From NCBI RefSeq assembly GCF_006345805.1, contig NW_021828395.1, positions 1 to 8,627 on the forward strand: a stretch of 8,627 nucleotides of DNA, written 5' to 3'. Below the pieces are notes generated by a model. It searched no databases. It had not been told where the DNA came from and saw only the letters and a list, made by a program, of their open reading frames with translations. Positions 1 through 8,258 of the stretch are shown piece after piece. A program made the position numbers and the translations under genes. How positions within the stretch are numbered: position 1 is the stretch's first letter; each line of letters opens with the position of its first letter. This DNA comes from Octopus sinensis (Eukaryota).

Positions 1-125
1 GGACATCGTAGTTGTTCATTTTGACCAAAACGCAGAAAAATTTTTTTAATTTTTTTTGGGGGGAAGGTTTTAAGGACCTCATCATGTAAGTCGAGGACAT
101 CGTATTGCCAATTTGAAGTTGTGTG

Positions 126-194
126 CACACACAGACAGACAGACAGACCAGACACACAGACAGACACACAGACAGACAGACAGACAGACACACA
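126..194 (+). repeat. Compound (CAGA)n/(CA)n microsatellite
   Basis: Directly visible: cacacacagacagacagacagaccagacacacagacagacacacagacagacagacagacagacacacac. Confidence 0.95.
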
Positions 195-207
195 CCTACC
201 ATTTTAT

Positions 208-821
208 TTTTTTTTTTTTTTTTTTTTTTTTTAATAGGAAACTTTAATTTATACAAACAAGACAAAAATTACAGATAGCTAAGTTAGTAAAGGCCTCACG
301 AGACACCCGACCAGCCGCGCGAATGGCGAAGACGTTCCCTCGGATCACAGCAATCGACAGACGTTCCAGGAGCCAAGAAAACTCTCTTGATCGTGACTAG
401 TCCTTGAAATCCGTCGACCGAGCGAGCGAAGGAAGCGGAGTGTCTTGGGACCGAAGATCCCGGAGGACTCCAAGGCAATTGGAGTAGTAAGAGCAGCGAG
501 TTGGACAGGTGGCCGTACTTGAGAATCTTTCGCTCCTCGGCCTGCCTGGAAGCGTGCCCAGGATTGGCGCGGACAGCGCGAGATTCCCAGCGAGAACGTG
601 TCCGAGCAGGTAGAATCCCAAATAAGGGATTTCCCCTGCTCGTAGGGGAAGGTGGACATGCCGTCAGGGCGTTTGCCATCCCCTCTATCCATCCAACAGG
701 TTCAGGATAGACGGGATGCCTGCTGAGGCGAGGGCTCTCTGTACGACTGAGTTGAGTTCACTGTGACGGGGGGCACGACCGGCACTCCGCCGGCAAGCGA
801 GGGGATGCAAACCGTACTCGC
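208..821 (-). mobile_element. CRE-like non-LTR retrotransposon copy 1 (5'-truncated, RLE domain only, poly(A) tail, 13-bp TSD)
   Basis: Poly-T 207/208-232 is the poly(A) tail. Perfect direct repeat CCTACCATTTTAT at 195-207 and 843-855. The frameshift-corrected minus-strand protein reads [113 protein letters not shown], i.e. the end of the zinc knuckle plus a PD-(D/E)xK restriction-like endonuclease. Stop at 244-246. Confidence 0.9.
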
Positions 822-846
822 AACCCTAACCCTAACCCTAACCCTA
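822..846 (-). repeat. Short interstitial telomeric-type repeat (TTAGGG)4 at the 5' junction of CRE-like copy 1
   Basis: Plus strand AACCCT x4 at 822-845, plus A846. The last unit overlaps the TSD copy at 843-855 by CCTA. Confidence 0.9.
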
Positions 847-1014
847 CCATTTTATATTAAGATAATAAACAAGTTTAAAAAAATCAAAAATCGAAATAAT
901 CGCAAGAAAATCACAATGCCAAAAATCCCATCAACTTTTAATTATAAAATAAAAATTTTATTTCTAAAATATATAAGTCGATCGCCAAAAAATCTCAATA
1001 TGAAAAGTAGCTCG

Positions 1015-3083: not shown

Positions 3084-3264
3084 CATAAGTTGCTTAAAAA
3101 AACAAACACGTTCTCACCATAAAAGTGACCCTATCGATAATCTAATCCAGGAATTCTCAACCTTTTTTGTTCATCGTCCCCTTAGATATTTTATCGCCCC
3201 CTTGTCCACATACAAATTTAAAATTTTTGTGCATTGTCCTTTAATTGGTTGTTTTTTGTATATA

Positions 3265-4566
3265 CAGTCAACCCTCTCTATAGTGAAACCCTCTCTATAG
3301 TGAACAGGCCATATTAATGCAATCTACAATAACAAATATTAGTAATTCTCATAATATATTTATTATAAAATGAATACCACGTTTAAAAATGTATAATATC
3401 ATTTTTTAAATATTTTTGTGATCACTATTAAAGAATAGTGAACGTCAAATTTTTGTGAACATAAAAATATTAAATTTAATATTTTTACATATATATTTAA
3501 AATTCTTTAAAATGAATAAACTAGACGTTCTACAGTTGTTAGCATGGTGGAAAATCGAAAACGCCTGTCATTTTTTCAAAAGAAGGAAATAATCGAATTT
3601 TATCAAAAAAGACATTACACACAGCGCGATTTATCCCTTTATTTCAATGTTTCTCTGGGCTGCATAAACAAAATTTTGAAAAATTCTGAAGGAATACTTA
3701 ATGTTCAAGATGACCAAAAAAAGAAGAAAATTTACTTCCCCAAGTCTCAACCATTCGACAGAGATTTATTTGAATGGTTCGTTAAAAAACGATCATTTGG
3801 ATTTACAATCAATGAATATCTTTTGAAGTCCATGTCTCTAAAAATGGCGAAAGTTTAATATTCAAGGATTTCAAGCATCAAATGGATGGCTTGAGAAATT
3901 TAAAAATCGATATTGCATTGCTTCCCGTGCTTTATGTGGGGAAAATCAATTTGTTGAAAACCTCTGTGATTGGAAAATTTTACAGAAAGCCTCAATAGAA
4001 AATTATAACAATATTGTTCAAAAATATTTTTAATTTGGAAGAAACTGGATTGTTTTTTAAAACTTTTGTCGAACAGAACATTAGCTGTTGACTCGGACAA
4101 AAATCTGTCTAATAAACAGATAAAAGAAAGAGTAACTGTTATGTTTTGCGTTAGTATAATGGGAGAAAAACTGACCCATTTGTTATTGAAAAAGCCAAAA
4201 ATCCACGCTGCTTTAAAGGAAGAAGAAATTTAATTAATATTTACAAGTGGAATACAAATCAAATAAAAAAGCATGGATGACATATGGCTAGTGAATATGA
4301 AGCTAGTGAATATGCGAAGGCGCTTGAATTATGGTTTCTTGAGAATGATTATGAACAAAGAGAAAAGTATACGAAATACAAAAAATTTTAAGAATTATCA
4401 AACTAATCATTCTCAAAATCACCGATTCATGATAAAATCTCTAAATAATCTTTGTAATTATACTTCAATATTGTTTATTGTTATTTTGATTCTTTTGTTC
4501 ACTATAGACAATAGTGAACATGATGTTTGACGTGGACATTTTGTTCATTATAGAGAGGGTTGACTG
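3265..4566 (+). mobile_element. pogo/Tigger element B, complete ends, internally deleted (non-autonomous)
   Basis: 23-bp TIRs: CAGTCAACCCTCTCTATAGTGAA (3265-3287) versus 4544-4566, 22/23 identical. TA on both sides (3263-3264, 4567-4568). Inserted in the 3' non-coding part of the hAT element. Confidence 0.92.
3544..4430 (+). pseudogene. pogo/Tigger transposase pseudogene of element B (HTH domains plus start of DDE_1; core deleted)
   Basis: MVENRKRLSFFQKKEII (HTH_psq-like), DLFEWFVKKR..FQASNGWLEKFKNRY..LCGE (CENP-B HTH), NIFNLEETGLFF, KERVTVMFCVS, NKKAWMT. It then jumps at about 4286 to a C-terminal-like ASEYAKALELWF segment; the DN..H and QPLD motifs are absent. Confidence 0.88.
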
Positions 4567-4631
4567 TAACTCAAAAATCAAAATATAAAACAATAAATCA
4601 AATGTAATTAAAATTGAATTTTTACTAAACA

Positions 4632-5348: not shown

Positions 5349-5427
5349 TCAAACAAATCTTTGAATCTAAGAGATATATCCGCTTCTAGTTCCTTCAAAT
5401 GTTGATAATATGTCATAATATTGTTTT
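5349..5427 (+). repeat. Direct duplication of hAT coding sequence, left copy (partner 8183-8258)
   Basis: TCAAACAAATCTTTGAATCTAAG(AGA)TATATCCGCTTCTAGTTCCTTCAAATGTTGA(T/C)AATATGTCATAATATTGTTTT: 79 bp versus 76 bp, differing by one substitution and one 3-bp indel. Confidence 0.95.
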
Positions 5428-5499
5428 CGGTGCCAGACAACTCGCCTGTAGGCGAGTTGTCCTGGAACTCGACAATAACAAGGACGGACAACTCGCCTA

Positions 5500-6816: not shown

Positions 6817-6860
6817 TTATTAGGATTTAATTTAATTAAAAATTTTAACAAAAGAAGAAA

Positions 6861-8087
6861 TTTTTTTTTTTTTTTATATTAAATTTATTATTAATAATGT
6901 CAGTTAATAAATTCAGGGAAGAGATTGATTTGAGAAATCAATTGAGGAGAGCCCGCTGCCTGTATGGAAAGCGAGTTCCCTCGGAGTATGGCTATTCCGA
7001 TCCTTTGTCTTAGCCATACTCCTTCACGAGGATCATTTTCTTTGTGGCGAGCATTCTTCCGAGTTCGCGCAAGAACTCGGCAGTCGCTGGGCCAACAGCT
7101 CCTGATGACTCAGCCGCAACAGGGGTGAATCTGTAGCGGTCCCCGAGGAAGGAATATTTTTTGGTTTTAAGGTTTTCCGCGATTGAGGCAGCTGCTCCAG
7201 GTGTCTGAACCGATTTAAGGAGATTCGTGCTTGAGTAAGTATCGACGCAAGTTGCGTCCCAGACCAAAGATCGTCCGGAGTTGAAAGGGAAGAGAGTCAT
7301 CCCGTCAGGTCTCTTTCCATCACCTCGATCGAGACCCACTGGTTCAAGCTGTGCTGGGAAGCCTGCAGCATTCAGAGCTCTGACGATCACGTCGTTCAGA
7401 GCGGCGTGACGTGGTCCTCTTCCGGCGGATCTCCTGCAGGATAGCGGGTGCAATCCCTTCGCATCGACCGTTTACCCGCAGCGGCATCGGTGCTCCTGGC
7501 AAACGTCTAGTCCAAGTCTTTGTCCGATTCCAATCCTCAAAGAATCGTCGTCCAAAAAAGTCCCGAGATTTGGGCAAGGGATTGCACCAAGCCATGCTCC
7601 GCTCCCTCCACTTGAGGCTGACACCAGGCAAGCAAGGCGATGTTGATTTGCTTCTTTTTTAAGCCCTTCTGAAATTTTGGAGCAGACAATGTTATCCCAG
7701 TTCCTTTGTTTCGTTGTGTCTTCGGGGATTTTGAGTCCTGACCCGTTCCAATCCCGGCAAGCTTCATCAAATGACTCATTCCAGCGAAGTCCAATAGTGT
7801 GACGAAGGACTTGCCGTGTCAAATGGTTGCAGCTTGAGAGAGACGAAAGATATGTCGGGTACGCGACCTCCAGCGCCGATCTTAGACCGACGCCCCCAAA
7901 TCCAGAGGGAAGCTTACATTGCTTCCAACCGAGTTCGTCGAAGCGGACGTTGATTAGTGACTCAACAGTTTGTTTGAGAGATTTGTCTATCGAAAGTAGA
8001 CTGTCGTAATGTTCGTGGCAGGGTGAACTTCGCAGTAGGTATAAAAGCTTGGGTAGTCCGATGTTGTTTCTCATCAGGAAGAAGGAT
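6861..8087 (-). mobile_element. CRE-like non-LTR retrotransposon copy 2 (5'-truncated in the distal RT region; zinc knuckle and RLE)
   Basis: ORFs 7472..8074 and 7010..7453 are the same frame separated by one TAA: LPKLLYLLRSSPC..CKLPSGFGGVGLR..SGAWLGAIPCPNLGTFLDDDSLRIGIGQRLG..CRCG*TVDAKGLHPLSC..RH..LEPVGLDRGDGKRPDG..VWDATCVDT..AENLKTKKY. After a -1 shift near 7037: DPREGVWLRQRIGIAILRGN..FIN*, stop at 6900-6902. AATAAA at 6889-6884, poly(A) 6875-6861 (15 nt). Imperfect TSD GAAGAA(A)TTTT at 6854-6864 and 8088-8097. Confidence 0.93.
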
Positions 8088-8182
8088 GAAGAATTTTAAA
8101 TTAATTGTCCGTCCTTGTTATTGTCGAGTTCGAGGACAACTCGCCTGTAGGCGAATCGAGTTCCAGGACAACTCCGTCAGCC

Positions 8183-8258
8183 TCAAACAAATCTTTGAAT
8201 CTAAGTATATCCGCTTCTAGTTCCTTCAAATGTTGACAATATGTCATAATATTGTTTT
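8183..8258 (+). repeat. Direct duplication of hAT coding sequence, right copy (partner 5349-5427)
   Basis: Same sequence as 5349-5427 apart from the missing AGA and one T>C change; it continues directly into upstream hAT coding sequence. Confidence 0.95.

What the first reader, a model, noticed from the sequence alone, without database searches (positions are those of the whole stretch)
195..863. Telomeric (TTAGGG)n repeats spliced in register into the 5' junction of a CRE-like retrotransposon insertion
Seen: on the element's sense strand the locus reads TSD ATAAAATGGTAGG + GTTAGGGTTAGGGTTAGGGTT + truncated element (GCGAGTACGGTTTGCATCCC..) + poly(A) + TSD ATAAAATGGTAGG. The other TSD copy is followed by TGTGTG, so the 21 nt of repeat were absent from the empty site and arrived with the insertion. 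They continue the target's 3' TAGG in exact telomeric register. The final GTT may double as the element's own Val codon (V-D-E-Y-G-L-H versus V-D-A-K-G-L-H in copy 2); this is inference. Known: the CRE-clade MoTeR (Magnaporthe) and Cnl1 (Cryptococcus) elements live in telomeric arrays, and telomerase can add repeats to break ends with short homology. Three models are inferred. (a) Telomerase extended the second-strand 3'-OH of the TPRT intermediate before joining. (b) The element RT template-jumped onto UUAGGG RNA or a G-overhang. (c) The copy was re-mobilised from a truncated donor embedded in a telomere array, implying a telomere-associated family that escapes to telomere-like internal sites (GGTAGG).
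Basis: partly seen in the sequence, partly recalled or inferred. Interest (0 to 1): 0.85.

Follow-up and report, generated by a model that had tools for sequence, protein, structure and literature searches.

The report
Telomere-repeat filler in a retrotransposon scar
A very recent, front-truncated copy of a jumping gene carries 18-21 bases of perfect telomere repeat between its duplicated target site and its own sequence; the scar suggests telomerase (or a template jump onto telomeric RNA) acted during the insertion, but in this family it is a single case.

Summary
On the minus strand the window reads TSD ATAAAATGGTAGG (855-843), 21 nt of perfect GTTAGG repeat (842-822), the 3' 589 nt of a retrotransposon, poly(A), then the same TSD (207-195) followed by TGTGTG.

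The element belongs to a young family of about 3.2 kb with PHD finger, RT and restriction-like endonuclease. Full-length copies read ...CTGTTGACGAGTACGG at this point. So the final GTT is microhomology with the element, and the true filler is 18 nt, in register with the target's TAGG.

The junction is unique in the 2.72-Gb assembly. Nineteen other junction loci of the family (17 independent insertions) have AT-rich targets, mostly 2-nt microhomology, two fillers copied from local sequence and no telomere repeats. The family is therefore not telomere-associated, and model (c) is disfavoured.

I favour telomerase extending the 13-nt 3' overhang of the insertion intermediate. A template switch onto G-rich telomeric RNA cannot be excluded.

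Two caveats. All three repeat families of the window that I traced lie only on unplaced contigs, so the host is probably a co-assembled organism, a dicyemid according to other scan notes. The available reads could not verify the junction.

The scan noted one similar scar before, in an RTE-like LINE (s1-106206).

The parts
843..855 (-). 5' copy of the 13-nt target site duplication ATAAAATGGTAGG. Its 3' end, TAGG, is in register with the telomere repeat.
825..842 (-). 18 nt of filler, (GTTAGG)3. It is absent from the target, as shown by the other TSD copy, and absent from the element.
822..824 (-). GTT, a 3-nt microhomology shared by the telomere repeat and the element (native ..CTGTTGACGAG).
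233..821 (-). 3'-terminal ~589 nt of the retrotransposon, truncated inside the CCHC motif of the endonuclease domain. It has 0 substitutions and 8 small indels against the family majority. One A is missing right after GTTG.
208..232 (-). poly(A) tail, about 25-26 nt
195..207 (-). 3' copy of the TSD, followed by the (TGTC/TG)n microsatellite of the target
119..194 (.). (GACA)n/(CA)n microsatellite. It lay directly 3' of the second-strand nick in the target.

Best explanation
A single, very recent target-primed reverse transcription event of a non-site-specific PHD-RT-RLE non-LTR retrotransposon.

Shown:
- The bottom strand was nicked at TTTTAT^AT and primed on the poly(A).
- The top strand was nicked 13 nt away. 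This left the upstream half with a 13-nt single-stranded 3' overhang ending ...ATGGTAGG-3'.

Inferred:
- That overhang ends in 4 nt of telomere repeat. Telomerase aligned on it and added about 3.5 repeats (GTTAGGGTTAGGGTTAGGGTT).
- The extended end then annealed through GTT to the cDNA at ..CTGTT|GACGAG and primed second-strand synthesis, which fixed the 5' truncation point.

The last step is the family's usual route, since most of its 5' junctions show 2 nt or more of microhomology.
For: - TSD geometry and the position of the tract are read directly from the sequence.
- There is microhomology at both joints. TAGG is 4 nt in register and GTT is 3 nt shared with the native element. Chance for each is roughly 0.4-2%.
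- Other copies join by 2-7 nt of microhomology. Two carry fillers re-copied from adjacent sequence: L030, 15 nt of upstream flank, and L005, 6-7 nt. So the joint is regularly remodelled by short, locally templated synthesis before it is sealed; extension of the target 3' end is my reading of the L030 filler.
- No sampled junction carries a piece of an abundant cellular RNA, which argues against frequent RT template switching.
- Telomerase insertion of in-register TTAGGG tracts at break 3' ends is documented in mammals (PMC2246262).
- The G-rich strand lies on the strand that carries the target 3'-OH, as telomerase extension requires.
- Short TTAGGG tracts are frequent in this compartment: 3 in about 277 kb held.
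- Lead only, untested: scan notes report a dicyemid TERT gene (s1-110800) and a second, similar scar in an RTE-like LINE (s1-106206).
Against: - This is one locus, and the same product is predicted by a template switch of the element's RT onto G-rich telomeric RNA.
- No telomerase-RNA-derived sequence flanks the tract, unlike the mouse TERC-ITS loci.
- The telomere motif of the organism that owns this contig was not shown directly. Long arrays were listed only on chromosome scaffolds.
- A search for the TERT RBD domain in the assembly returned nothing, and it failed in the controls too, so it is uninformative.
- The junction is not verified by reads.
Confidence: 0.45

Rival explanations
1. Template switch. 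The element's reverse transcriptase left the element RNA at ..GUUGACGAG and continued on a G-rich telomeric RNA (TERRA, or a transcript of one of the TTAGGG-bearing transposons). After about 21 nt, the C-rich cDNA end annealed to the target's TAGG overhang.
For: The orientation fits a UUAGGG template. There is microhomology at both joints. Non-LTR RTs are known to jump templates, for example in U6-L1 chimeras and R2 in vitro (own knowledge). Scan notes report many TTAGGG-bearing transposons in this compartment (untested).
Against: None of 17 other independent junctions carries foreign RNA-derived sequence, although rRNA and snRNA are far more abundant than telomeric RNA. The telomerase RNA template itself is excluded as acceptor, because it would place the C-rich strand on the sense strand.
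Confidence: 0.25
2. Re-mobilised donor. A truncated copy embedded in a telomere array was transcribed from the repeats and retrotransposed in trans.
For: The same sequence outcome is expected. Telomeres are poorly assembled, so a donor could be missing. MoTeR, Cnl1 and FoTeR, which group with CRE and SLACS, do live in telomeres (PMC12857005).
Against: The junction 24-mer is unique, even with 2 mismatches allowed. No copy in about 70 loci lies in a telomere array. The family's nick sites are A/T-rich and non-specific. The model needs two events where one suffices.
Confidence: 0.08
3. Later break repair. A longer copy with a longer TSD was inserted normally. A later double-strand break then deleted its 5' part and was healed with a telomerase-type ITS insertion.
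For: ITS insertion at breaks is a known process (PMC2246262). Short ITSs are common in this compartment.
Against: The tract starts exactly at the end of a 13-nt TSD. Only one unambiguous TSD in this family measures longer (L027, 16 nt, of which 7 nt are shared with the element), and the others are 7-12 nt. The copy has no substitutions, so there was little time for a second event.
Confidence: 0.08
4. Capture of a telomeric DNA fragment, or polymerase-theta-type copying from telomeric DNA in trans, during joining of the 5' end.
For: Templated fillers of the end-joining type occur in this family (L030, L005).
Against: Those fillers copy adjacent sequence, not distant loci. Blunt capture does not predict register at both joints.
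Confidence: 0.07
5. Assembly or sequencing artefact in an 8.6-kb, partly unpolished unplaced contig.
For: The TE copy carries uncorrected indels. The junction is not read-verified.
Against: A perfect 13-nt TSD flanking poly(A), element and repeat is not what a chimeric read or a collapse produces. The unique flanks are cleanly supported at even depth (table 8).
Confidence: 0.05

Closest known systems
Telomerase-mediated insertion of interstitial telomeric sequences at double-strand breaks (Nergadze et al. 2004, 2007; PMC2246262)
   Same: [quoted passage not shown] Here that is 4 nt, TAGG.
   Different: Here the 'break' is the staggered second-strand nick of a retrotransposition intermediate, and the other partner of the joint is a retrotransposon cDNA. 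No TERC-derived sequence is present. No orthologous empty site was available.
Microhomology-mediated 5' joining and chimeric 5' ends of LINE insertions (L1 5'-truncation junctions, U6-L1 chimeras; own knowledge)
   Same: A 5'-truncated, TSD-flanked copy, microhomology at the truncation point, and extra sequence between the TSD and the element.
   Different: The extra sequence is telomere repeat, not untemplated bases or an snRNA. The element is RLE-type, not APE-type.
Telomere-targeting retrotransposons MoTeR, FoTeR and Cnl1, which group with CRE and SLACS (PMC12857005), and TRAS/SART (own knowledge)
   Same: An RLE-bearing non-LTR element next to telomere repeats.
   Different: Those insert into telomere arrays as their specific target. 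This family inserts at diverse AT-rich internal sites, and this copy has an ordinary non-telomeric TSD.
Endonuclease-independent L1 insertion at dysfunctional telomeres (Morrish et al. 2007; own knowledge)
   Same: Interplay of a LINE RT with telomeric DNA ends.
   Different: There the telomere 3' end primes the cDNA, giving a telomere-poly(A) junction with no TSD. Here the repeat lies at the 5' junction inside a TSD.

Membership tests
Non-LTR retrotransposon inserted by target-primed reverse transcription | RT domain, poly(A) 3' end, variable 5' truncation, TSDs of variable length | tested here: met
   RVT_1, E 2.4e-18. The nearest solved relatives are R2 proteins. Copies are truncated at 20 different points and have poly(A) tails; 7-16-nt TSDs are resolvable in about two thirds of them.
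RLE-bearing non-LTR group (R2/CRE/NeSL/R4/Hero) | C-terminal CCHC followed by RHD/N ... E ... R/KPD x12-14 D/E | tested here: met
   CRCGGTVDEYGLHPLAC-x8-RHS-x21-E-x9-KRPD-x14-D at residues 624-700 of the L033 ORF. The motif is as quoted in PMC12857005. RHS replaces RHD/N, and the second Cys-to-His spacer is 9 residues rather than 7-8. No APE domain was found.
CRE clade (CRE1/2, SLACS, CZAR, MoTeR, Cnl1) | RT phylogeny grouping with CRE/SLACS reference elements | not tested
   No reference sequences were available. One relative (barnacle) is automatically named 'SLACS protein'.
CRE clade (CRE1/2, SLACS, CZAR, MoTeR, Cnl1) | Site-specific insertion into spliced-leader genes or telomere repeats | tested here: not met
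   Nineteen other junction loci (17 independent insertions) lie at unrelated AT-rich sites.
Telomere-associated retrotransposon family | Copies embedded in or capped by telomere arrays | tested here: not met
   Only the window copy touches a telomere tract among about 70 loci. The junction is unique.
Telomerase-type ITS insertion at a DNA end | [quoted passage not shown] | tested here: met
   TAGG + GTTAGGGTTAGGGTTAGG(GTT), no mismatch.
Telomerase-type ITS insertion at a DNA end | Tract absent from the ancestral empty site | tested here: inconclusive
   Inferred from the second TSD copy, which is followed by TGTGTG. No empty or paralogous site exists in the assembly, and no empty-allele joint was seen in the unitigs.
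Telomerase-type ITS insertion at a DNA end | The host telomere repeat is TTAGGG and the host has telomerase | tested here: inconclusive
   Long TTAGGG arrays were listed only on chromosome scaffolds. In the window's own compartment I saw only short tracts. The TERT domain search was uninformative. Scan notes claim a dicyemid TERT gene and terminal tracts; I did not test these.

The most novel reading that the evidence does not exclude
In this co-assembled, dicyemid-like genome, telomerase routinely competes for free 3' ends. It would add telomere repeats not only at chromosome breaks but also to the second-strand primer of retrotransposition intermediates and at transposon deletion joints. Short TTAGGG tracts would then be a general repair signature. 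This may be linked to the programmed DNA elimination reported for dicyemids (own knowledge).
Probability: 0.2. Interest if true: 0.75.

Novelty: new variant of a known kind. Interest (0 to 1): 0.5.

Why it matters
If telomerase made the tract, this scar is a natural snapshot of a normally invisible step of LINE integration. It would show that the target's second-strand end exists as a free single-stranded 3' overhang long enough to be captured by another enzyme before it pairs with the cDNA. It would also show direct competition between telomerase and a retrotransposon for the same DNA end.

My four searches of the open-access literature found no description of a TSD-flanked insertion with telomeric filler. 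As one locus (two, counting an untested scan note) it is an anecdote. Its value lies in motivating a census.

Tried and rejected
- Second copy of the junction: none.
- Empty or paralogous target site: none.
- Native internal repeat in the element: rejected, because 29 longer copies read CTGTTGACGAG there.
- Read validation: only Logan unitigs were available and 812-854 was masked as repeat. No empty-allele joint was seen.
- Genome-wide census of short telomeric tracts: 407 matches of a ~3.8-repeat tract ending in TT + non-A, but listings stop inside the chromosome scaffolds.
I did not try to extract letters by other routes.
- Longer telomere patterns, meant to reach unplaced contigs, also listed only chromosome scaffolds.
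- TERT RBD family search: no hit, and none in the controls, so it is uninformative.
- Exact-protein look-ups for the window's ORFs: nothing on record.
- Pfam on the window's short ORFs: nothing.
- Literature searches for a precedent: none found. Dicyemid telomere biology: nothing found.
- Clade naming by the Atlas: unnamed RVT_1/PHD clusters only.

Full report
**1. Observation**

The window is the whole of contig C4866 (8,627 bp) of a 2.72-Gb assembly. Read on the minus strand, it holds:
- ATAAAATGGTAGG at 855-843;
- GTTAGGGTTAGGGTTAGGGTT at 842-822;
- G-CGAGTACGG... and the rest of the element, down to 233;
- a poly(A) tail of about 25-26 nt;
- ATAAAATGGTAGG again at 207-195, followed by TGTGTGTCTG.

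The 13-mer occurs only at these two places in the window. The tract therefore lies inside the target site duplication. TAGG followed by GTTAGG continues the telomeric register without a break. Reversed-pattern controls for telomeric patterns gave zero hits genome-wide, so chance can be dismissed.

**2. The element**

The 589-nt body matched 40 scored copies out of 494 first-look candidates, at 96-99% identity. Copies are truncated at many different 5' points. The longest share a 5' end, TTGCACGTTGTTGCACGTTG..., about 3.2 kb upstream of the poly(A).

The coding sequence has three recognisable parts:
- a PHD finger and RVT_1;
- R2 proteins as its nearest solved relatives;
- the restriction-like endonuclease signature CxC-x9-H-x3-C-x8-RHS-x21-E-x9-KRPD-x14-D, matching the motif quoted for CRE, SLACS and MoTeR elements in PMC12857005.

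Relatives of 36-59% identity are single-ORF elements of about 3.0-4.5 kb, from arthropods, cnidarians and many metagenomic contigs. One of them is automatically named 'SLACS protein'. So 'CRE-like' is fair at the level of the RLE-bearing group, but clade membership was not tested. The defining site-specificity of that clade is not met.

**3. The junction in the light of the family**

All 29 longer copies read ...GGGGGAACTGTTGACGAGTACGG where the window reads ...TTAGGGTTGCGAGTACGG. From this:
- GTT, and the following G, are native element sequence.
- The true filler is 18 nt, (GTTAGG)3.
- The filler overlaps the element by 3 nt of microhomology.
- One A is missing in the window.

The window copy differs from the family majority by eight 1-2-nt indels and by no substitution. 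Short-read unitigs contradict several of these indels (table 4), while the unique flanks are clean. This is the signature of a repeat left unpolished in a long-read assembly, so the missing A is probably an error. The insertion itself is extremely young.

**4. Is it a property of the family?**

No, on the evidence available.
- The junction 24-mer is unique, even with two mismatches allowed.
- Nineteen other 5' junction loci (17 independent insertions) lie at unrelated AT-rich sites.
- Where the TSD is resolvable, in about two thirds of them, it measures 7-16 nt, counting ambiguous A's and microhomology. The target end usually overlaps the element by 2 nt, and once by 7 nt.
- Three junctions have fillers. 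L004 has 2 nt. L005 has 6-7 nt repeating adjacent element sequence. L030 has 15 nt re-copied from the flank just upstream of its TSD.
- None has telomere repeats or foreign RNA sequence.
- None of about 70 held loci shows a copy inside a telomere array.

It also shows that the 5' joint is normally made by microhomology annealing, sometimes after short, locally templated synthesis. For L030 I read that synthesis as the target's 3' end being re-extended.

**5. Mechanism**

The geometry is fixed by the sequence:
- The bottom-strand nick lies at TTTTAT^AT.
- The top-strand nick lies 13 nt away.
- The upstream half therefore carries a 13-nt single-stranded 3' overhang ending in TAGG.

That overhang is a textbook substrate for de novo telomere addition. 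In mammals, species-specific interstitial telomeric tracts start in register with the 3' end of the ancestral break far more often than chance allows: four or more nt in register in 17% of mouse and rat loci, against no more than 0.39% expected (PMC2246262).

I therefore favour telomerase adding about 3.5 repeats, followed by the family's ordinary microhomology step through GTT. My confidence in this is 0.45.

The main rival is a template switch by the element's RT onto G-rich telomeric RNA. It predicts the same product. The orientation excludes only the telomerase RNA template itself as the acceptor. The lack of any other RNA chimera among the 17 independent junctions mildly disfavours it.

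The other rivals are each scored at 0.08 or below:
- Later break repair needs a TSD longer than the 13 nt seen, which only one other resolvable TSD in this family exceeds, and a second event in a copy that has no substitutions.
- Fragment capture does not predict register at both joints.
- An artefact does not produce a perfect TSD.

**6. Whose genome?**

The following all occur only on unplaced contigs, numbered C49 and above, and never on the chromosome-scale scaffolds:
- the family's 24-mer, 69 hits;
- all DNA hits of two element segments;
- the pogo-like transposon at 3240-4570, 73 hits;
- the 94-bp satellite at 1-118, 2,732 hits.

Related proteins are filed under Octopus sinensis, all on contigs shorter than 0.7 Mb. 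The window's non-TE flank is 28% GC, against 37-40% in three samples from chromosome scaffolds. The window therefore belongs to a separate compartment, most simply a co-assembled organism.

Many notes of this scan call these contigs dicyemid, that is, from a kidney parasite of octopus. I tested only the separation, not the identity. Runs from two other coded organisms also hold the family and the satellite.

The telomere motif of this compartment is not shown directly. I found three short or decayed TTAGGG tracts in about 277 kb of it. Scan notes report terminal tracts, a compact TERT gene and many TTAGGG-bearing transposons. All of these are leads only.

**7. Novelty**

My four searches of the open-access literature found no TSD-flanked retrotransposon insertion with a telomeric filler. 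The scan itself noted one similar scar, 27 nt of repeat at the 5' junction of an RTE-like LINE, on another piece of this assembly (s1-106206). I could not examine it. If it is real, two unrelated element types share the feature, which points to a host activity.

I rate this a new variant of two known things: telomerase-type ITS insertion and LINE 5'-junction fillers. Interest is 0.5. It is a clean and mechanistically suggestive scar, but a single locus cannot separate telomerase from a template switch.

**8. Limits**

- No long reads were available.
- Listings of telomeric patterns never reached the unplaced contigs.

Noticed in passing
whole window; G000 contigs numbered C49 and above: All three repeat families of the window that I traced (the RLE retrotransposon, the pogo-like transposon at 3240-4570 and the 94-bp satellite at 1-118) occur only on unplaced contigs, never on the chromosome scaffolds. 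The assembly's proteins are labelled Octopus sinensis. This points to a co-assembled second organism, a dicyemid according to other scan notes.
   Followed up: partly
window 233-821: The TE copy differs from its family only by 1-2-nt indels, which short-read unitigs contradict, while the unique flanks are clean. Repeats in this contig were left unpolished, so single-base indels in repeats of this assembly should not be read as biology.
   Followed up: yes
window 1-118: Partial units of a satellite of about 94 bp (GTTGTTCATTTTAACCAAAATGCA...). One 24-mer has 2,732 exact hits, in arrays on many unplaced contigs. Word depth is enormous in run X1 and in the runs of two other coded organisms.
   Followed up: partly
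L034:780-812 (G000:C12599, about 191.29 kb): A second short interstitial tract, TTAGGGTTAGGGTTAGGGTT, sits between CTCATTAA and TTTAATAATAAA in the same compartment. Its origin is not resolved. L064 holds a decayed tract.
   Followed up: partly
L030 and L005 (5' junctions): Two other copies carry templated fillers: 15 nt re-copied from the flank just upstream of the TSD (L030), and 6-7 nt repeating adjacent element sequence (L005). This is a polymerase-theta-like signature at retrotransposon 5' joints.
   Followed up: partly
window 6840-8100 (-): A second, diverged relative of the same element group (about 73% DNA column identity over the aligned tail). It has the same CCHC...KRPD endonuclease motif but an in-frame stop inside the motif (CRCG*).
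   Followed up: partly
window 5349-5491 and 8105-8258: A 79-bp direct repeat (95%) and an adjacent 50-bp inverted repeat rich in the palindrome GGACAACTCGCC..GGCGAGTTGTCC bracket about 2.6 kb, which includes the second retroelement copy. This may be a split host element or a hairpin-ended transposon.
   Followed up: no
L071 (C1:16.418 Mb) and L072 (C3:23.505 Mb): On the chromosome scaffolds, two short TTAGGG tracts sit next to related sequence (..GATTGGTTAAAATTNCCGAAAT..). In L071 the tract is flanked by an inverted repeat (TGTCACTGTTATTTGACA / TGTCATAAATAACAGTGACA). This looks like a repeat family that carries telomere-like tracts.
   Followed up: no
G000:C1:75.756-75.775 Mb, C2:206.27-206.31 Mb, C7:51.92 and 101.42 Mb, C10:16.74 Mb, C17:16.65 Mb: Large, partly degenerate TTAGGG arrays on chromosome scaffolds. 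Some are clearly internal, and many short tracts mix TTTAGGG with TTAGGG units.
   Followed up: no
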